64,000 nt of DNA, from the IMG/VR virus record IMGVR_UViG_3300009158_000031, positions 1-64,000 of that record; one strand, written 5' to 3'. The notes under the pieces are model-generated. The model did not search any database and had not been told where the DNA came from. It was given only the letters and a program-made list of their open reading frames with translations. The position numbers and the translations under genes are program-made. Shown here piece after piece: positions 3,089 to 21,562 of the stretch. Each line of letters begins with the position of its first letter. The stretch's first letter is position 1.

Positions 3089-3156
3089 ATGTTAATAACT
3101 TTCCGAAAATAAATGTCAAAAAAGTTTTTTATTCCACAAAAAAGTATTATATTTGT
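3089..3156 (+). promoter_or_regulatory. Bacteroidota-type promoter, near-identical to 21473-21540
   Basis: TGTTAATAAC...TTTTTTATTCCACAAAAAAGTATTATATTTGT, with TAnnTTTG at 3148-3155. Confidence 0.8.
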
Positions 3157-3176
3157 ATATACAAAATAATCAAATA

Positions 3177-5075
3177 ATGAACATACGAGAAAAAGAAAAT
3201 TTATACCTTTTAGCCAAAACTAAATATTACGAAGGTGAACCTATTCTATCCGATTTCGAATTCGATAATCTCGAAGATGAATTAAAGCTAGAAAATTCTC
3301 AAGTAATTAAAATTGTAGGTTCTCAAGATCTAAAGGATATTAAGTTTAATCACGTATCTCCTATGCTTTCGTTAAACAAAATTCAAGTTCAACGAAACGA
3401 ATCAATCACTGTTGCTAATACTAAATATCTTACATGGTTAACTGCCAATCAAAGTAATACTTCCTTACAAATGGAAGCTACTCCTAAATTCGATGGTTCT
3501 TCTTGTAATTTGATTTACGAAAATGGTAAACTAACTCTCGCATTAACTCGTGGTGATGGTGCTAAAGGCCAAAATATTATTGAAAAAATGAAATTGATTG
3601 TACCTAATACAATCTCTTCAAAAGATAAAATCGAAATTCGAGGTGAAGTGGTTATTCCAGTAACTACGTTCGATTCTAAATATGCCGCAATATATAAAAA
3701 TCCACGAAACTTCGTTGCTGGTATTCTAGGTAGGGATATCGTCGATACCTCAATTATTTCAGATTTTCATTTTATAGCATTCGAATGCAGAATTCATACA
3801 AACACATCTCAACACCATTCAAACACTCTACAATTCTTAATCGATAATCAATTCAGAACTACACCAAAAATGATTATGTTCGATAAATTCGAATATGCTT
3901 ATAATGAAATACATAATTATCGAACAAACGGTTCACCTTACCAATTAGATGGTATGGTTATTAAATTCCCAGAAAATTTAAGAAATGTAATTGGCGAAAC
4001 CGATTATGCACCTAAATGGGCAGTAGCAATTAAATTTCCTCCAAAGGAATCTATTACCACAATCAAAAAAATTATATGGAACGTTGGTATATCTTCTGAA
4101 TTTACACCAGTTGCAGTACTCGATCCAATCGATTTAGATGGAACTATCGTTTCAAATGTTAATCTTCATAATTATGGTAATGTAATACGTCAAGGTTTAC
4201 TTCCAGGTGCTCAAGTAATTATCGTAAAATCTGGTGATATCATTCCTATCGTTCAAAAAGTTATTAAACCTTCTACTGAATCTATCGAAAAATATCTACC
4301 TTCTCCGTGTTCTTCTCAATGTAAAATTGAAGTACAAGGTAATATTCACTTAGTATGTACAAATCCTACATGTCCTAACAAATCAATTCTACAATTAATG
4401 CGAGGAATTGGTACCTTCGGTTTTCGAAATGTAGCCGGATCTACGATTAAGAAAATTCACAAAGCAGGTATACAATCAATACATGATATATTCGATAATT
4501 CTAAATTCAACGAACAAAAACTAATTGAAAGTGGCGAATTTAAAAAAGGAAGATCGCTAGAAATTCTTCTTAATTCTCGAAATAATCCAGAAAGAAAAAT
4601 AACGCTTCCCCTGGTTATTGCATCGTTATCCTTCGATAACGTTGGATTTTCTACTGCTACACAAATAGCTAAGTTATTCGAAAACAAAACACCTGATTGG
4701 ACCGGATTATCATCTGCATCTTATTTACCTTTCTTAAATAAACAATCTACTGAATATCTATCAGTTCTTCGCTTAATACAAACTCTAGAATCTAATGGAT
4801 TTGCAATACAAAGCGAAGAAGTTCGTACAATTTCAGTAAATTCAATTATCTTTGAAATGACCGGATCACCAAAACCTTATGGATTTAAAACCAAGGAAGA
4901 TTTCTTAAAGTTAATTACCAACAATGGTTATTCTCATGGTGATCTTAATGATAAATGCAAAATATTAATTACTGACGATATCAATTCAAATTCATCTAAA
5001 ATGACAAAAGCTAAAAAGTTAGGTGTTGAAATCATGACTTATGAAGATATTCTTAATAAAATCAAGAATATATAA
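3177..5075 (+). CDS. ligA: NAD-dependent DNA ligase
   Basis: KxDG motif (PKFDG), TRGDG, RGEV, NPRN, DGMVIK, PKWAVAIKF, a Cys4 Zn finger and a C-terminal BRCT domain. Confidence 0.95.
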   Translation: MNIREKENLYLLAKTKYYEGEPILSDFEFDNLEDELKLENSQVIKIVGSQDLKDIKFNHVSPMLSLNKIQVQRNESITVANTKYLTWLTANQSNTSLQMEATPKFDGSSCNLIYENGKLTLALTRGDGAKGQNIIEKMKLIVPNTISSKDKIEIRGEVVIPVTTFDSKYAAIYKNPRNFVAGILGRDIVDTSIISDFHFIAFECRIHTNTSQHHSNTLQFLIDNQFRTTPKMIMFDKFEYAYNEIHNYRTNGSPYQLDGMVIKFPENLRNVIGETDYAPKWAVAIKFPPKESITTIKKIIWNVGISSEFTPVAVLDPIDLDGTIVSNVNLHNYGNVIRQGLLPGAQVIIVKSGDIIPIVQKVIKPSTESIEKYLPSPCSSQCKIEVQGNIHLVCTNPTCPNKSILQLMRGIGTFGFRNVAGSTIKKIHKAGIQSIHDIFDNSKFNEQKLIESGEFKKGRSLEILLNSRNNPERKITLPLVIASLSFDNVGFSTATQIAKLFENKTPDWTGLSSASYLPFLNKQSTEYLSVLRLIQTLESNGFAIQSEEVRTISVNSIIFEMTGSPKPYGFKTKEDFLKLITNNGYSHGDLNDKCKILITDDINSNSSKMTKAKKLGVEIMTYEDILNKIKNI

Positions 5076-16137: not shown

Positions 16138-17003
16138 TGAAATATATCATAACATCAAAAAATGTTCGTTCTGGTACTAGCGTAGATGATGCCGCTGATC
16201 CATTTCAAGTTACCGAAATAGCAACTGAATTAATAATAACTCGGTTGTATTTGATACATCTGTTAAATACCTCGATTATAGACATTGAAGATACTATCGT
16301 ATGTATAGGAGATAGACGATGTTTATATACAAACATTTTCAAAAATGTTATGTCATTCGAAGATTATACTAATTCTATTGACATCGATAAAAAAGATGTT
16401 ATAGATCTATTAGAATCCAGCAAATTTAATTCGCTTGCCTCTGGATTAGTAGACTCGAGAGAATTACCATATCTACCTTTTTATCGAAATTGGGATAGAG
16501 ATAAAAATCATATTTTAAACGTTGAAGATAGTGATCTATCAGATTATGATTTATCTTCACCGTTCTTGTGTTTAGTTATTCGAAAACGAAGTGCATGGTC
16601 AGAAAAAAACATGTCAAATGATTTTTGGAATGATGTTATATCTGAATTAGAAAATCGAGGAATTAAAATATTCGTATTTGGAAAAGAAACTGAGGGTTTT
16701 TGTACAGAAAAAACGAAGCAAATTAAAACATTTCGAGATTGGTGTTCTATTGTTAAACATGTTAATTGTAAACATGTTGCTAGTACAATGACTGGTGGAG
16801 TATATCCTCTTATCGTATTTGGAAATTCAAATTGTAAAATGACAATAATCGACAATACCAATCTTAAGAAAGCTCATGGACACGATCCATCGTTCTATAA
16901 CTCATGTATAAATTTCTCTAATATCGAAATGAAATTTATCGAAAATATACCAACAATAAAAGAATTTGCCGATGAATTATGTAGTAATTACATCAATAAA
17001 TAA
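16137..17003 (+). CDS. Putative GT-B (GT9-like) glycosyltransferase
   Basis: The C-terminal half RKRSAWSEKN...FWNDVI...IFVFGK...MTGG has the GT9-like layout. Confidence 0.45.
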   Translation: MKYIITSKNVRSGTSVDDAADPFQVTEIATELIITRLYLIHLLNTSIIDIEDTIVCIGDRRCLYTNIFKNVMSFEDYTNSIDIDKKDVIDLLESSKFNSLASGLVDSRELPYLPFYRNWDRDKNHILNVEDSDLSDYDLSSPFLCLVIRKRSAWSEKNMSNDFWNDVISELENRGIKIFVFGKETEGFCTEKTKQIKTFRDWCSIVKHVNCKHVASTMTGGVYPLIVFGNSNCKMTIIDNTNLKKAHGHDPSFYNSCINFSNIEMKFIENIPTIKEFADELCSNYINK

Positions 17004-17955
17004 TTTAACCGAATCTATTCGAAAATTCTCGGCAATACCGGATTGGCATGTTATTGTTGTAGGCGATTTAAAGAGTAAAAGATATTCACATCCAAATGTG
17101 ACTTATCTAGGAGTAGAAGAACAAACGAAACTTAATTTATTTAGTGCATTAACAACTCCATACAATCATTATTCAAGAAAGAATTTAGGTTATTTGTACG
17201 CTATAAGTAAAGGAGCTAATCTAATTTTTGATACTGACGATGATACTATTCCGTATGATGATTGGTATCCAAGAGATTTTGTATGCGATAAATTGGTAGA
17301 TGGATCAACCGTTATCAATCCCTATACGCTATTCACTAAAGAAAAATGTTGGCCTAGAGGATTAGACCTATCTCATATAAATAAGCCAAATACTTACACG
17401 ATATCTAATAAAGGCTCAAAGATAGGTGTTTGGCAAGGAGTAATTGATGATGATTCAGATTTTGATGCAATATATCGATTAACCATAAATAAGCACATAA
17501 AATTTAATAAAGAAGATGATGTCGCAATAGGAACACGATGTTACACCCCTTTCAATACACAAAGTACTTTATGGAATACTAAATTTCATTCTTTGCTTTA
17601 TGTTCCCATCTCAGTAGATTTCAGATTTACGGATATTCTAAAAGGTTATATAGCTCAAAGAATTATGTGGGATTATGGATATCAGGTGGGTTTTCATTAT
17701 CCTAACACATATCAAGTTAGAAATGAGCACGACTTCTATAAAGATTTTCTAGACGAGATTTCCATGTACCGATCAATTCCTTCATTGATGAATACTCTAG
17801 AAAGTATAAAACTCAAAAATGAGTCTATTGAAAATGATCTATTTTCGGTTTATTCTGCTTTATTAGATATTGGCATCGTGAAAGAGGAAGAGATGATAAA
17901 CCTACAACATTGGATAGATGATATCTCTAAGTTATCTAAAAAGGATTTAAGGTAA
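16972..17955 (+). CDS. STELLO/DUF288 (GT75-related) glycosyltransferase
   Basis: VITSIN, VIVVGDLKS, YNHYSRKNLGYLYAI, IFDTDDD, WPRG, PFNTQST and FRFTDILKGY. Confidence 0.8.
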   Translation: MNYVVITSINNLTESIRKFSAIPDWHVIVVGDLKSKRYSHPNVTYLGVEEQTKLNLFSALTTPYNHYSRKNLGYLYAISKGANLIFDTDDDTIPYDDWYPRDFVCDKLVDGSTVINPYTLFTKEKCWPRGLDLSHINKPNTYTISNKGSKIGVWQGVIDDDSDFDAIYRLTINKHIKFNKEDDVAIGTRCYTPFNTQSTLWNTKFHSLLYVPISVDFRFTDILKGYIAQRIMWDYGYQVGFHYPNTYQVRNEHDFYKDFLDEISMYRSIPSLMNTLESIKLKNESIENDLFSVYSALLDIGIVKEEEMINLQHWIDDISKLSKKDLR

Positions 17956-18652: not shown

Positions 18653-19915
18653 ATGGCTACTGGACCATACACCAATTCGTTAAACTTTCGTTTAAACCGA
18701 ACAAAACCTCTAAATTATACAGATTTAGATAATAACTTTAGATATCCAAATCAATGGGGACTCGATCGATCATATCTGTCAGGTATGATGGTTGTTTCGT
18801 ATGATTTTGGTTATACTGCATCAGATTCAATATCTATGTATATTGCTTCTAGCGATCATACGAGTACTATGCTTAATGCTCCAGGATTAACTGGTGCTCA
18901 ATGGACTGCAATTGCAGTTCCTAGTGCTGGATATGTTGGTCCAACCGGACCTCAAGGTGGAATTGGTGCTCAAGGTGCTGGATCTCAAGGATCTCAAGGT
19001 CCTCAAGGTTATCAAGGTGTTACCGGTTTTCAAGGAGTTCAAGGATCTCAAGGAGCTACTGGTATTCAAGGACATACTGGATATCAAGGGGTTCAAGGTA
19101 CTAAAGGAGATCAAGGTTTTAAAGGAGATCAAGGATTCCAAGGAGCTCAAGGTTATACTGGTAATAAAGGAGATCAAGGTTTTCAAGGTATTCAAGGAAC
19201 TGTAGGTAATCAAGGATTCCAAGGAGCTCAAGGAGAACAAGGAGATCAAGGTAACTCTATTACTGGATCTCAAGGAGATCAAGGATTTCAGGGAGATCAA
19301 GGATTTCAGGGAGATCAAGGTACTAAAGGAGATCAAGGTATTCAAGGTATTACTGGGCCAGGAGTTGGGTCTCAAGGACCTACTGGTTTCCAAGGTATTC
19401 AAGGAGCTAAAGGAGATCAAGGATTTCAAGGTATTCAAGGATCTAAAGGAGATCAAGGATTTACTGGATTTCAGGGTAATCAAGGACCTACCGGTTTCCA
19501 AGGTAATCGAGGTAATCAAGGATATCAAGGAGATCAAGGTTATCAGGGATATCAAGGTTATCAGGGATATCAAGGAGATCAAGGATTTCAAGGATTCGAT
19601 ACAGCATATGCTGCTATAAATAATCAAGTTTCTAGTTACACATTAGTGTTAGCCGATGCTGGTAAATTAGTGGAAATAGATAATGCCGCATCTTCAATTC
19701 TTACGGTTCCTTTGAATGCATCGGTTGCTTTTCCTGTAGGTACTCAAATTATTATTGCTAGACTTGGTACTGGTGAGGTGAGCGTTGTTGGTACTGGTGG
19801 TGTAACGGTTGTTAGTGCAAATTCATTTACATTCTTAAATAATCGATACTCATCTGCATCTCTCATAAAAAGAGGTACCAATGCATGGTATCTATTTGGA
19901 GATCTTAAACCTTAA
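18653..19915 (+). CDS. Collagen-like tail/head fibre protein
   Basis: N-terminal PLNYTDLDNNF fibre-attachment motif, a long G-X-Q collagen tract, and a C-terminal YTLVLADAGK domain typical of phage fibres. Confidence 0.85.
   Translation: MATGPYTNSLNFRLNRTKPLNYTDLDNNFRYPNQWGLDRSYLSGMMVVSYDFGYTASDSISMYIASSDHTSTMLNAPGLTGAQWTAIAVPSAGYVGPTGPQGGIGAQGAGSQGSQGPQGYQGVTGFQGVQGSQGATGIQGHTGYQGVQGTKGDQGFKGDQGFQGAQGYTGNKGDQGFQGIQGTVGNQGFQGAQGEQGDQGNSITGSQGDQGFQGDQGFQGDQGTKGDQGIQGITGPGVGSQGPTGFQGIQGAKGDQGFQGIQGSKGDQGFTGFQGNQGPTGFQGNRGNQGYQGDQGYQGYQGYQGYQGDQGFQGFDTAYAAINNQVSSYTLVLADAGKLVEIDNAASSILTVPLNASVAFPVGTQIIIARLGTGEVSVVGTGGVTVVSANSFTFLNNRYSSASLIKRGTNAWYLFGDLKP
18929..19600 (+). repeat. Collagen Gly-X-Y coding repeats (GFQ/GDQ/GYQ)
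   Basis: 9-nt periodic caagg repeats. Confidence 0.9.
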
Positions 19916-19930
19916 TAAATTTAAAACGAT

Positions 19931-20659
19931 ATGATAATTGGATCTATAGGAACTGTTAGTTCTACTTGGGAACCACCAATACCTATGAGTGGTTTAATGG
20001 AATGGTATGAACCTGGTAATACGGCCGGTATTATCATTGCCAATCCACCGACCACGCCTATGGATGAGATGATAAACCTTGCTAATCCAACAGGCTCACC
20101 AAAATATCAACAATTATTTGTTTCTGAATTTGGAAGTGATTTACTTGGAGCTACCACGATAACAACAAATGCAACTTCGAATAGTTGGAGTAATTCAACG
20201 GATTGGAGTTCTATGACTGCATATACAGTAATTATCATATCTAAATATAACGATCCATCAAATAATCTAGAAAATACTTTTACAAACTTAGGTGGACCAG
20301 TCACGTTTAACTTAGGTAATGGTAATAATGGTGGTCATGGAAAAATAAATTTATGTATAGTCAATGGAGATGTTTTATACGCAGGAGATGCCGCCGATAT
20401 ACTTTGGGGAATGTATACTTTATGCGGTAGCACAACCATTAAATTAAATTTTTATAGAAATGCGAATCCAACTTCAATTCTAAGTCCACCTGCTAATTTC
20501 CGACCTCTTCCCGGAGGAACCCTGATTTTTTCATTTGATCCACCTGAAACATCTTCGTCGGTTGGTGCGGTTTTGCTCTATAATAGAATAATAACCGATG
20601 ATGAAAGAAATTCGATATTTCAACATTATAAGAAACAATTTCCTTTATCTGATACTTAA
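19931..20659 (+). CDS. Fibre-associated protein, LamG/ConA-like
   Basis: GLMEWY...VGAVLLYNRIITDDE pattern; follows the fibre gene. Confidence 0.55.
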   Translation: MIIGSIGTVSSTWEPPIPMSGLMEWYEPGNTAGIIIANPPTTPMDEMINLANPTGSPKYQQLFVSEFGSDLLGATTITTNATSNSWSNSTDWSSMTAYTVIIISKYNDPSNNLENTFTNLGGPVTFNLGNGNNGGHGKINLCIVNGDVLYAGDAADILWGMYTLCGSTTIKLNFYRNANPTSILSPPANFRPLPGGTLIFSFDPPETSSSVGAVLLYNRIITDDERNSIFQHYKKQFPLSDT

Positions 20660-20667
20660 CATACAAC

Positions 20668-20699
20668 AAAAGCTCTAGAAATTAATCTAGAGCTTTTTT
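20668..20699. terminator. Bidirectional rho-independent terminator
   Basis: AAAAGCTCTAGA-aattaa-TCTAGAGCTTTT lies between the convergent + gene and the tmRNA. Confidence 0.85.
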
Positions 20700-20713
20700 C
20701 ATTTAAGTGGAAG

Positions 20714-21149
20714 TGGAGCTGGAGGGAATCGAACCCTCGTCTTGTTCAGCTAATACTAAGAATTCATTTACAGGCTTAGTTTGGTTTATGACACCAACAA
20801 ACTTTTGTGCATTTCGTTTTTCTTGTTGACTTAATGCTCGGTCAAGTTTACTCTTCGGTATAAGCCGAATTTCACAGAACAATTAACAGCGATCTTAATG
20901 GGTTACTGATTGTTCTCGGATGGTACTACTAACCCTTTTTCCCGGTGTGCACATTTTTTTAATATCAGTAAGTGCGACTGATTGGTTAGGCAGCGATAGC
21001 TACTTCACCACCAACGAATGCCATAGCATCTTCGAAGGTAAAAGTTGACGTATTGTCAGTTATTGTTTTGATAGGTAATTTAAGTGTTTCCATCTAACAC
21101 TGCCTGCATTCAAAGAACTACGACTGCCAATCGATGCCTGGTCAGCCCC
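20714..21149 (-). ncRNA. ssrA: tmRNA
   Basis: 5' GGGGCTG pairs with 3' CAGCTCC-A, giving the G3:U Ala identity. T-arm GAGGGTTCGATTCCCTC. Internal tag frame 21057-20986 reads DNTSTFTFEDAMAFVGGEVAIAA*. Confidence 0.95.
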
Positions 21150-21189
21150 ATATTAATTTGTGTATGTATTATATGTATACTACAGAAAC

Positions 21190-21218
21190 AAAAAAAGGAG
21201 AGTACGAATACTCTCCTT
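21190..21218 (-). terminator. Rho-independent terminator (UUCG loop)
   Basis: Minus strand AAGGAGAGTA-TTCG-TACTCTCCTT followed by a T run, downstream of the lipoprotein gene. Confidence 0.85.
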
Positions 21219-21240: not shown

Positions 21241-21408
21241 TTACTTAGTAGTAGCAGTATCAACACAAGTGGCTTTGCAAGTGGTATCAACCGAAGTTGA
21301 ATCTGTTGCAACCATCGTAGAATCAGTTGCTGTTGCAGTTGATTCAGGAGCATTTCCACAAGAAGCTAAAGCTACCGTTGCGATTAATGCGAAAATTACG
21401 TTTTTCAT
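21241..21408 (-). CDS. 55-aa lipoprotein (missed by the ORF track)
   Basis: MKNVIFALIATVALAS-CGNAPESTATATDSTMVATDSTSVDTTCKATCVDTATTK*. It has an SPII lipobox (LAS-C) and its own terminator. Confidence 0.85.
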   Translation of the reverse strand: MKNVIFALIATVALASCGNAPESTATATDSTMVATDSTSVDTTCKATCVDTATTK

Positions 21409-21472
21409 AAATTAATTATTTTAAATTGTTATAAGATAGTTATATGTAAGCCTAGGTTCGTTAGTTTTGGTA

Positions 21473-21540
21473 TTGTTAACAAGTTTCCTAAAATAAATGT
21501 TAAAATATTTTTTTATTCCACAAAAAAGTATTATATTTGT
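21473..21540 (+). promoter_or_regulatory. Bacteroidota-type promoter, copy of 3089-3156
   Basis: 32 identical bp with 3125-3156; TAnnTTTG at 21532-21539. Confidence 0.8.
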
Positions 21541-21562
21541 TATAACCAATTAAATAAATTAT

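What the first reader, a model, noticed from the sequence alone, without database searches (positions are those of the whole stretch)
21241..21408. Unannotated tiny lipoprotein loaded with Bacteroidota O-glycosylation motifs
It has its own terminator and lies on the opposite strand to nearly all other genes. After the LAS-C lipobox, the 39-aa mature part has four D-(S/T)-(T/A) sites (DST, DST, DTT, DTA). These match the Bacteroidota general O-glycosylation motif D-(S/T)-(A/I/L/V/M/T). Inference: a host-glycosylated envelope peptide acting in superinfection exclusion, receptor masking or as a glycan sink.
Basis: partly seen in the sequence, partly recalled or inferred. Interest (0 to 1): 0.6.

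Follow-up and report, generated by a model that had tools for sequence, protein, structure and literature searches.

The report
Tiny phage lipoprotein of sugar-attachment sites
A 55-residue gene in a 254-kb lake phage encodes a membrane-anchored peptide that is little more than four Bacteroidota-type sugar-attachment sites; many large phages carry relatives, and it resembles the host's own PG1828 mini-lipoproteins, whose role is still unknown.

Summary
Window 21241-21408 (-) is a 55-aa ORF with a textbook lipoprotein signal (lipobox LAS|C) and four D-(S/T)-(T/A) sites. Its own hairpin terminator follows, in a genome where about 97% of ORFs lie on the other strand. It is a real gene: relatives keep the frame, with pN/pS 0.3-0.5. 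All four Asp-Ser/Thr pairs are invariant among 11 close homologues.

It belongs to a family of 43-64-aa lipoproteins found in about a dozen different phage contexts, including Prevotella Lak megaphages. In these, 53 of 57 Asp residues in the mature part are followed by Ser/Thr.

The closest named family is NCBIfam NF050142, the PG1828 family lipoprotein, which is chromosomal in Bacteroidota. PG1828 itself is 7.1 kDa with four predicted O-glycosylation sites. The phage protein aligns over its full length but scores below the cut-off.

In 7 of 13 phage contexts the gene sits in or beside a tRNA/tmRNA/GOLLD island.

A Bacteroidota host is inferred, not shown. Lipidation, glycosylation and transcription of the ORF are untested. 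Superinfection exclusion or envelope masking remains a guess.

The parts
21241..21408 (-). Whole ORF of the mini-lipoprotein, 55 codons plus TAA stop (stop at 21241-21243)
   Evidence: The frame is kept open in 20 family members, and indels come only in multiples of three. pN/pS is 0.3-0.5.
21361..21408 (-). Signal peptide, residues 1-16 (MKN + hydrophobic core + LAS)
   Evidence: PS51257-type rule met. LPAM_1 16.6 bits.
21358..21369 (-). Lipobox L14-A15-S16-C17. The Cys17 codon (21358-21360) is the predicted lipidation and cleavage site.
   Evidence: Cys is invariant in all aligned members.
21244..21357 (-). Tail of 38 residues after Cys17: Thr/Ala/Ser/Val/Asp-rich, predicted unstructured, ending in Lys55
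   Evidence: AlphaFold2 with the family alignment gives pLDDT 58.6, pTM 0.12 and no secondary structure. A C-terminal Lys is present in 12 of 13 non-redundant phage members.
21316..21324 (-). Sequon 1, D29-S30-T31
   Evidence: D29 and S30 are invariant in both alignments.
21295..21303 (-). Sequon 2, D36-S37-T38
   Evidence: D36 is invariant; S37 is at least 90% conserved.
21280..21288 (-). Sequon 3, D41-T42-T43
   Evidence: D41 is invariant among close homologues.
21253..21261 (-). Sequon 4, D50-T51-A52
   Evidence: D50 and T51 are invariant among close homologues. D50 is at least 90% conserved in the wider family.
21187..21218 (-). Intrinsic terminator of the ORF: 10-bp stem, UUCG loop, U-run
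   Evidence: Invariant in six related contigs.
21440..21448 (-). Conserved upstream motif TACATATAA, about 35 nt before the ATG; candidate promoter element
   Evidence: Conserved in six relatives. The only other minus-strand copy in the genome lies before the tmRNA. Its function as a promoter is inferred.
21169..21178 (-). The same motif (ATACATATAA), about 20 nt before the tmRNA 5' end
20711..21149 (-). tmRNA gene directly downstream on the same strand. It is a neighbour, probably co-regulated, and not part of the protein.
   Evidence: Rfam RF00023, 85.6 bits, E 2.6e-33. The pair is syntenic in L009. Lake metatranscriptome contigs match 20713-21140 exactly and stop there.
20668..20697 (.). 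Two-way hairpin terminator that closes both the + strand tail-fibre block and the minus-strand tmRNA unit

Best explanation
This is a real phage gene for a PG1828-like 'sequon-repeat' mini-lipoprotein.

Proposed course of events:
- The pre-protein is exported by Sec, lipidated on Cys17 and cut by signal peptidase II. These steps are inferred from a canonical lipobox.
- That leaves a 39-residue unstructured peptide tethered to a membrane on the periplasmic side or on the cell surface.
- In a Bacteroidota host, the general O-glycosylation system would add its oligosaccharide to the Ser/Thr of up to four D-(S/T)-(T/A) sites. This is inferred. The product would then be mostly lipid and glycan: a membrane-anchored mini-mucin.

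Origin and expression:
- The gene is a diverged, phage-borne relative of small chromosomal Bacteroidota lipoproteins of the same build.
- It is an independent transcription unit, with its own upstream motif and its own terminator.
- In many phages it travels with the stable-RNA genes (tRNA, tmRNA, GOLLD). This suggests expression by the host polymerase alongside them.

Most likely role (the weakest step): remodelling the envelope of the infected cell with a host-like glycolipopeptide. This would mask or exclude, either against superinfecting phages or against re-adsorption of progeny to debris. It would not be an enzyme or a folded receptor blocker.

My step-wise odds: real gene 0.95; lipoprotein 0.85; Bacteroidota host 0.85; glycosylated 0.65; exclusion or masking role 0.25. 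The overall confidence given refers to the molecular identity (an exported, lipidated, host-glycosylated PG1828-like peptide), not to the role.
For: Gene is real:
- Ten database homologues at 60-93% identity.
- pN/pS 0.3-0.5, with in-frame indels only.
- The sense frame is open in all 20 members. The antisense frame is broken in four.

Family:
- 23 IMG/VR loci fall into about 11 contexts, plus a 642-kb megaphage and the Lak phages.
- All have a lipobox.
- 53 of 57 Asp residues are followed by S/T; 55 of 57 residues at the next position are T, V or A. Asp-to-Asp spacing is 5 or 7. Per-sequence shuffle P is 0.001-0.03.

Relation to host proteins:
- NF050142 matches over full length at E 6e-8.
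- hhalign of phage versus bacterial alignments gives 98.2%, E 4e-14.
- Tiny ORFs of the same build occur in Bacteroidota genomes: 81 of 401 match NF050142 at E <= 1e-5 and 10 pass the cut-off. No control genome passes the cut-off.

Glycosylation rules from the literature:
- Sites are nearly fully occupied.
- Engineered motifs become glycosylated.
- Cross-species glycosylation works (PMC12871550).
- PG1828 has 4 predicted sites.

Host:
- Only 6% of genes have a Shine-Dalgarno-like 4-mer, and leaders are 53% A.
- About 18 copies of a promoter repeat carry TAnnTTTG.
- The nearest ligase relatives belong to phage PAU, whose host is Sphingobacterium (PMC3738902), and to Prevotella Lak phages.

Disorder. 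Own transcription unit.
Against: - No transcript of the ORF appeared in four lake metatranscriptomes that do hold the adjacent tmRNA. These are contigs only, so this is weak evidence.
- The score against NF050142 is 33.2 bits, below the 50-bit cut-off. That model also rings below cut-off in Bacillus subtilis. Signal peptide plus low-complexity repeats can inflate both HMM and hhalign scores, so convergence cannot be told from homology.
- The host is not identified. The phage tmRNA gives no useful match to 401 Bacteroidota genomes.
- One family member (L039) lies beside a permuted tmRNA, so its host is uncertain.
- In what I could read, no PG1828-family member has been shown to be glycosylated. 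PG1828 gave 0 MS matches in Veith 2022.
- Nothing computed bears on exclusion versus other roles.
Confidence: 0.5

Rival explanations
1. Host-like maintenance gene. The phage supplies its own copy of an abundant PG1828-type envelope lipoprotein, to keep the envelope intact until lysis while host gene expression is shut down. It would have no role against other phages.
For: The same architecture occurs as housekeeping-flanked chromosomal genes, often in tandem arrays, in many Bacteroidota. The phage gene travels with other 'keep the host machinery running' genes: tRNAs, tmRNA, and in L040 an ATP-dependent protease. PG1828 is abundant enough to co-purify with LPS (PMC13466725).
Against: The phage versions are a distinct Thr/Val-rich branch below the family cut-off. 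The function of the host proteins is itself unknown. An infection cycle is short compared with lipoprotein turnover (my knowledge).
Confidence: 0.2
2. Decoy or sink. A highly expressed peptide made only of sequons and a lipobox soaks up the host's O-oligosaccharyltransferase, undecaprenyl-linked glycan or lipoprotein-maturation capacity. Host envelope proteins, including receptors or defence proteins, are then under-modified.
For: The protein has no feature other than a lipobox and 3-5 sequons. Motif density is about 34 times the proteome average. Almost every Asp is used for a sequon.
Against: Host genomes encode the same kind of protein for themselves, which argues against a purely parasitic sink. 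No expression level is known.
Confidence: 0.1
3. The repeats serve another purpose and the match to the sequon is coincidental. For example, they could be a binding or spacer repeat, possibly in a host outside Bacteroidota, and the peptide is not glycosylated.
For: The extended repeat [V/T]-A-[T/V]-D-S-T-x-V is conserved beyond the minimal three-residue motif. The host is not proven. L039 has a permuted tmRNA.
Against: The family occurs in Prevotella Lak phages, and its bacterial relatives are in Bacteroidota. The spacers vary freely in length and residue while D-[ST]-[TVA] is kept. The genome shows Bacteroidota-style expression signals.
Confidence: 0.12
4. Outer-membrane spanin (Rz1-like) that takes part in lysis.
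For: Size and lipobox resemble Rz1. There is a weak PHROG hit to an Rz-like spanin (E 0.05).
Against: That hit covers mostly the signal peptide. No neighbouring or embedded inner-membrane spanin, holin or endolysin recurs across contexts. The tail has only one Pro and is not Pro-rich. The extra Cys residues are not conserved.
Confidence: 0.04
5. Braun-lipoprotein-like tether. The conserved C-terminal Lys is cross-linked to peptidoglycan.
For: A C-terminal Lys is present in 12 of 13 non-redundant phage members and many bacterial ones. Some bacterial members show VDSAAA(V/K) heptads.
Against: No helix or coiled coil is predicted. Repeat spacing varies between 5 and 7. Several bacterial members end in H, Q or M. 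I know of no such cross-link in Bacteroidota.
Confidence: 0.04
6. Chance ORF, or a frame over some other element.
For: The ORF is short and low-complexity. The antisense frame is also open in most members. No RNA contig covers it.
Against: The start, stop, lipobox and sequons are conserved across sequences that share about 45-55% identity and sit in unrelated genomic contexts. pN/pS is below 0.5.
Confidence: 0.03

Closest known systems
PG1828 family lipoprotein (NCBIfam NF050142; founding member Porphyromonas gingivalis PG1828/PGN_1739)
   Same: Both are about 55-75-aa pre-proteins with a lipobox, followed only by a short Ala/Thr/Val-rich tail carrying 4-6 D-(S/T)-x sites. The phage protein aligns over the full 59-position model (E 6e-8). 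Profile-to-profile comparison gives 98%. PG1828 is 7.1 kDa with 4 predicted O-glycosylation sites.
   Different: The phage protein is phage-encoded and scores 33 bits, below the 50-bit cut-off. Its tail is Thr/Val-rich rather than Ala-rich. PG1828 is known as a triacylated TLR2 agonist; nothing of that kind is known here. The physiological role of PG1828 is unknown too.
Superinfection-exclusion lipoproteins of coliphages (T5 Llp; Cor of T1/phi80/HK022)
   Same: Small phage-encoded lipoproteins made from their own transcription unit. In the window the gene lies about 0.6 kb from tail-fibre-like genes, as llp lies beside the receptor-binding gene (the T5 arrangement is from my knowledge).
   Different: There is no sequence relation beyond the signal peptide (PHROG Cor E 0.0096, residues 1-40). 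Llp is a folded receptor-binding protein, whereas this tail is predicted unstructured. Adjacency to tail-fibre genes is not kept in the family.
Substrates of the Bacteroidota general O-glycosylation system (motif D-(S/T)-(A/I/L/V/M/T))
   Same: It is a predicted non-cytoplasmic protein, and four exact motifs are conserved. Lipoproteins are a main substrate class in P. gingivalis, 42 of 145 glycoproteins.
   Different: Ordinary substrates are folded proteins with one or a few sites. Here the sites are the whole protein. No glycan has been observed.
Rz1-type outer-membrane spanins
   Same: Tiny phage lipoproteins with a mature part of about 40 residues.
   Different: No partner gene, no lysis cassette, not Pro-rich.
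Braun's lipoprotein Lpp
   Same: A small, abundant lipoprotein ending in Lys.
   Different: No predicted coiled coil. The weak Ala-zipper hit came only from a bacterial relative (E 0.26).

Membership tests
PG1828 family lipoprotein (NF050142) | Score at or above the curated cut-off of 50 bits | tested here: not met
   Window protein 33.2 bits; phage relatives 41.2 and 25.3; bacterial relatives 59.0 and 49.5.
PG1828 family lipoprotein (NF050142) | End-to-end alignment to the 59-position model | tested here: met
   Residues 1-53 align to model positions 1-52, E 6.3e-8. hhalign of phage versus bacterial alignments gives 98.2% over 52 columns. Low complexity may inflate both.
PG1828 family lipoprotein (NF050142) | About 7-kDa lipoprotein with roughly four D-(S/T)-x sites | tested here: met
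   55 aa with 4 sites. PG1828 is 7.1 kDa with 4 predicted sites.
PG1828 family lipoprotein (NF050142) | Chromosomal gene of a Bacteroidota bacterium | tested here: not met
   The gene lies in a 254-kb virus record.
PG1828 family lipoprotein (NF050142) | Triacylated N-terminal Cys, TLR2 agonist | not testable with these tools
   This property is known for PG1828 from the literature.
Bacterial lipoprotein (signal peptidase II substrate) | PS51257-type rule: K/R in the first 7 residues, six uncharged residues, then [LIVMFWSTAG]2-[LIVMFYSTAGCQ]-[AGS]-C, with Cys at position 15-35 | tested here: met
   Met by the window protein (Cys17) and by all 20 family members tested. LPAM_1 is below cut-off, 16.6 versus 20 bits. 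SignalP was not available.
Bacteroidota general O-glycosylation substrate | D-(S/T)-(A/I/L/V/M/T) motif in a non-cytoplasmic region | tested here: met
   Four motifs lie after the lipobox and are conserved in the family.
Bacteroidota general O-glycosylation substrate | Made in a host that has the system | tested here: inconclusive
   Indirect evidence only: leaders lack Shine-Dalgarno motifs, TAnnTTTG promoter repeats are present, and relatives occur in Lak and PAU phages. The tmRNA comparison was uninformative.
Bacteroidota general O-glycosylation substrate | Glycan actually attached | not testable with these tools
   Needs mass spectrometry or a gel shift in a glycosylation mutant.
Cor / Llp superinfection-exclusion lipoproteins | Sequence relation beyond the signal peptide | tested here: not met
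   phrog_1119 E 0.0096 over residues 1-40, driven by the signal peptide.
Cor / Llp superinfection-exclusion lipoproteins | Conserved linkage to the receptor-binding or tail-fibre gene | tested here: not met
   The gene is near tail-fibre-like genes only in the window-type contigs. Other members sit in RNA islands or beside gp32, a protease and others.
Rz1-type o-spanin | Adjacent or embedded i-spanin within a lysis cassette; Pro-rich mature part | tested here: not met
   No such neighbours. One Pro in 38 residues.
Lpp/OprI alanine-zipper lipoproteins | Helical coiled coil with C-terminal Lys | tested here: not met
   The Lys is present, but no helix is predicted and repeat spacing is irregular.

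The most novel reading that the evidence does not exclude
Large phages of Bacteroidota repeatedly carry a minimal 'lipid anchor plus glycan sites' gene inside their stable-RNA islands. Through it they hijack the host's general O-glycosylation system, turning the peptide into a glycolipid-like coat component that protects the infected cell from further phage attack or from a host defence. That would be the first phage function known to depend on this phylum-specific glycosylation. It would also be a handle on the unknown role of the host PG1828 family.
Probability: 0.15. Interest if true: 0.75.

Novelty: new variant of a known kind. Interest (0 to 1): 0.5.

Why it matters
The purpose of the general O-glycosylation system of Bacteroidota is still an open question (PMC12871550), and so is the purpose of the abundant PG1828-type mini-lipoproteins. 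This family has almost nothing but a lipid anchor and glycosylation sites. Both the hosts and many of their largest phages, including the gut Lak megaphages, keep it.

That gives a very small, easily engineered test substrate and a clear experiment: is the glycan itself the functional part?

In my literature searches I found no description of phage-borne copies. Their recurrent placement beside tRNA, tmRNA and GOLLD genes is also unexplained.

Tried and rejected
- ARAGORN found no tmRNA in the window; Rfam did.
- blastn of the 7-kb neighbourhood against deposited phages hit only collagen repeats.
- The genome-contig scan returned only signal-peptide matches to larger lipoproteins of Limisoma and Taibaiella, which are not family members.
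- Pfam has no family for the protein.
- PHROG hits to Cor and Rz-like spanin are signal-peptide driven.
- The phage tmRNA against 401 Bacteroidota genomes matched only the last 30 nt, so it gives no clue to the host.
- AlphaFold2 gave no fold, so no fold search was run.
- The supplement of the P. intermedia glycoproteome paper holds no PG1828 entry. The F. johnsoniae glycoproteome paper is not in the library.
- The lake metatranscriptome data are contigs, not reads. They show the tmRNA but cannot show absence of the mRNA.
- A sigma-70 consensus scan found no minus-strand promoter. No TAnnTTTG lies upstream of the ORF by eye.
- Neighbours of family members in non-RNA contexts gave no common theme.
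- Not run: the large profile search of 1.84 billion representatives.

Full report
**1. What is there**

Window 21241-21408 (-) is an ATG-started ORF of 55 codons.
- Signal and lipobox: residues 1-17 (MKN, a 12-residue hydrophobic core, L-A-S-C) meet the PROSITE-type rule for signal peptidase II substrates. Pfam LPAM_1 matches only below its cut-off.
- Tail: the remaining 38 residues are 32% Thr and contain four Asp. Each Asp opens a D-(S/T)-(T/A) triplet at 29-31, 36-38, 41-43 and 50-52.
- Terminator: a 10-bp hairpin with a UUCG loop and seven U lies 23 nt after the stop (21218-21187; dG -14.6 kcal/mol, z -4.9).
- Genome and strand: the window is the first 64 kb of a 254,393-bp virus record with 33% G+C. 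In it, 329 of 338 crude ORFs lie on the + strand.

**2. More than chance**

The motif D[ST][AILVMT] occurs 0.31 times per 100 residues in the rest of the phage's ORFs. No other 38-residue window holds more than two. Shuffling the mature peptide puts all four Asp into a motif in 0.19% of trials.

**3. A real gene**

- The word-indexed protein search found ten metagenomic homologues of 54-57 aa at 60-93% identity.
- In their alignment the Cys and all four Asp are invariant, while the two extra Cys (C-K-A-T-C) are not.
- On the DNA, differences between contigs give pN/pS of 0.3-0.5. All length changes are whole codons.
- The lipoprotein frame is open in all 20 family members examined.
- The antisense frame that is also open in the window (+ strand 21269-21415) is a by-product of codon composition. 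It is broken in four members.

**4. A phage family**

A pattern scan of IMG/VR returned 23 loci. tblastn of deposited phages added a 642-kb uncultured megaphage and the Prevotella Lak phages.
- All encode 43-64-aa proteins of one build. They have a signal peptide, a lipobox Cys, a short linker and three to five repeats of about [V/T]-A-[T/V]-D-S-T-x-V, and they usually end in V-K or T-K.
- Over 13 non-redundant members, 53 of 57 Asp are followed by Ser/Thr, and 55 of 57 residues at the next position are T, V or A.
- Asp-to-Asp spacing is 5 or 7. Each sequence on its own beats its shuffles at P 0.001-0.03.
- The spacers vary; the sequons do not.
- AlphaFold2 with this alignment finds no structure (pLDDT 58.6, pTM 0.12).

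**5. Relation to host proteins**

NCBIfam NF050142, 'PG1828 family lipoprotein' (59 positions, cut-off 50 bits), matches the window protein end to end at 33.2 bits (E 6e-8). It matches other phage members at 25-41 bits.

Searching 401 Bacteroidota genomes gave these results:
- The phage alignment hit tiny ORFs (54-77 aa) of the same architecture.
- NF050142 matched 81 genomes at E <= 1e-5, and 10 passed the cut-off.
- Among 14 control genomes the family rang, below cut-off, only in Bacteroides thetaiotaomicron and Bacillus subtilis.
- The B. subtilis hit shows that sub-threshold scores of this low-complexity model are not fully specific.

The bacterial genes are chromosomal. They lie between housekeeping genes and often form tandem arrays of two to four. 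Profile against profile, the phage and bacterial sets align at 98.2% probability. I therefore call the phage protein PG1828-like but not a member by NCBI's criterion. Homology and convergence on 'anchor plus sequons' cannot be separated.

**6. What is known of PG1828**

It is a triacylated P. gingivalis outer-membrane lipoprotein and the main TLR2 agonist contaminating LPS preparations (PMC13466725, PMC10126205). In the P. gingivalis O-glycoproteome study it is listed as PGN_1739, 7.1 kDa, with no MS matches, no identified sites and four predicted sites (PMC8729774 Table S6). Its cellular role is unknown.

**7. Would it be glycosylated?**

The 2025 review of the system (PMC12871550) makes four points:
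- Asp almost always precedes the modified Ser/Thr.
- Common motifs are nearly fully occupied in non-cytoplasmic proteins.
- Engineered motifs become glycosylated.
- Proteins are cross-glycosylated between species.

Lipoproteins are a major substrate class (42 of 145 glycoproteins in P. gingivalis). If the host is a Bacteroidota member and the peptide is exported, glycosylation is the expected outcome.

**8. The host**

The host is inferred, not shown. Four lines of evidence point to Bacteroidota:
- Only 6% of genes have a Shine-Dalgarno-like 4-mer upstream, and leaders are 53% A.
- About 18 copies of a + strand promoter repeat carry TAnnTTTG, the Bacteroidota -7 element (the consensus is from my knowledge).
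- The NAD-ligase's nearest named relatives are from phage PAU, whose host is a Sphingobacterium (PMC3738902), and from Prevotella Lak phages.
- Family members occur in Lak phages.

Against this, the tmRNA comparison gave nothing. One family member, L039, lies next to a permuted tmRNA.

**9. Surroundings**

Directly downstream on the same strand, past the terminator, lies a tmRNA gene (20711-21149). It is closed by a two-way terminator that also ends the + strand tail-fibre block.
- Synteny: the ORF-terminator-tmRNA arrangement is kept in L009 (tmRNA confirmed). The ORF-terminator-tmRNA start is kept in L014, L016, L017 and L043.
- Shared motif: both units are preceded by (A)TACATATAA, the only two minus-strand copies in the genome. 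They may share a promoter type.
- RNA evidence: contigs from four lake metatranscriptome studies match 20713-21140 without mismatch and stop there. So the tmRNA exists as a discrete RNA. None covers the ORF, which neither shows nor excludes its mRNA.

Across the family, 7 of 13 contexts have a tRNA, tmRNA or GOLLD gene within 86 nt to 1.3 kb, often on the same strand inside a tRNA array. The others lie beside gp32, an ATP-dependent protease and a polynucleotide kinase-like ATPase, or unknown genes. No lysis cassette recurs.

**10. Interpretation**

The shown facts are a conserved, independently terminated gene and a canonical lipoprotein signal. They also include a tail whose only conserved features are sequons and a C-terminal Lys, and relatives in phages and in Bacteroidota chromosomes.

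The inferred steps are export, lipidation and O-glycosylation, giving a membrane-anchored glycopeptide.

The role is a guess. I rank the options as follows:
- envelope masking or exclusion, 0.25;
- host-like maintenance, 0.2;
- the sequon match being coincidental, about 0.12;
- decoy or sink for the glycosylation or lipoprotein pathway, 0.1;
- spanin, Braun-like tether, or a chance ORF, each 0.05 or less.

**11. Verdict**

This is a new variant of a known kind: a phage-borne, diverged PG1828-like mini-lipoprotein. Interest is moderate, because the family offers a minimal substrate for asking what the phylum's O-glycans are for, and because its linkage to stable-RNA islands is unexplained.

Noticed in passing
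window 20711-21149 (-): Phage-encoded tmRNA (Rfam 85.6 bits) that ARAGORN missed. Lake metatranscriptome contigs match it exactly and end at its borders, so it is made as a discrete RNA.
   Followed up: partly
window about 20986-21057 (-); L009 6269-6715; L020 369-743: The tmRNA tag reading frame is unusually long and is conserved between diverged phages...TFTFEDAMAFVGGEVAIAA in the window, and AEEKSSFTFADAMAFVGADLAVAA in L020 as called by ARAGORN. From memory, Bacteroidota tags are only about 9-10 residues.
   Followed up: partly
window 21474-21560 (+), plus 19 more places in the 254-kb genome, e.g. 3090-3175: A roughly 60-nt repeat, TGTTAATAACTTT...TTTTTTTATTCCACAAAAAAGTATTATATTTGT, lies upstream of + strand genes. 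It is probably the phage's main promoter class and contains the Bacteroidota-type TAnnTTTG.
   Followed up: partly
L019 2235-2644, L020 2222-2633, L021 1747-2154 (-), L030 1713-2122 (-): GOLLD RNAs (260-327 bits) lie next to tmRNA and tRNA genes and to the mini-lipoprotein gene in related lake phage contigs.
   Followed up: no
own genome C1:240522-241014 (outside the window): The phage's only two tRNAs (Leu-tag, Met) flank another, unrelated 104-aa lipoprotein ORF at 240619-240933. A third lipoprotein ORF lies at 144843-145088.
   Followed up: no
window 18653-19915 (+) and 19931-20659 (+): A collagen-like (G-x-Q/D repeats) tail-fibre-type protein and a following ORF end the + strand block just before the minus-strand unit. 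The only DNA-level matches to deposited phages were to this collagen repeat.
   Followed up: no
window 16966-17955 (+) and 3153-5075 (+): An ORF with a STELLO-like glycosyltransferase domain (E 6.5e-11) and an NAD-dependent DNA ligase with BRCT domain. Eight of ten large ORFs tested have no Pfam family at all.
   Followed up: no
L080 3745-5017; L081 3504-4412; L082 3705-4642; L083 3496-4334; L084 3467-4007: Bacteroidota chromosomes carry tandem arrays of 2-4 PG1828-like mini-lipoprotein paralogues. They sit in one conserved neighbourhood: ECF-type sigma plus trypsin-like peptidase on one side, adenylosuccinate-lyase-like and NfuA genes on the other.
   Followed up: partly
L053, L055, L060, L061, L063, L065 (bacterial): One bacterial orthologue group of the mini-lipoprotein lies about 0.8 kb from a pair of tRNA genes. 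This echoes the phage linkage to RNA genes, but it may be a single lineage's accident.
   Followed up: no
L039 3901-4188: A permuted (two-piece type) tmRNA with tag ANDNFALAA lies next to a family member. The host range of the family may not be uniform.
   Followed up: no
window 21269-21415 (+): The antisense frame of the gene is open (48 aa) in the window and in most relatives. This is a side effect of the Ala/Thr/Val/Asp codon mix and not a second gene.
   Followed up: yes
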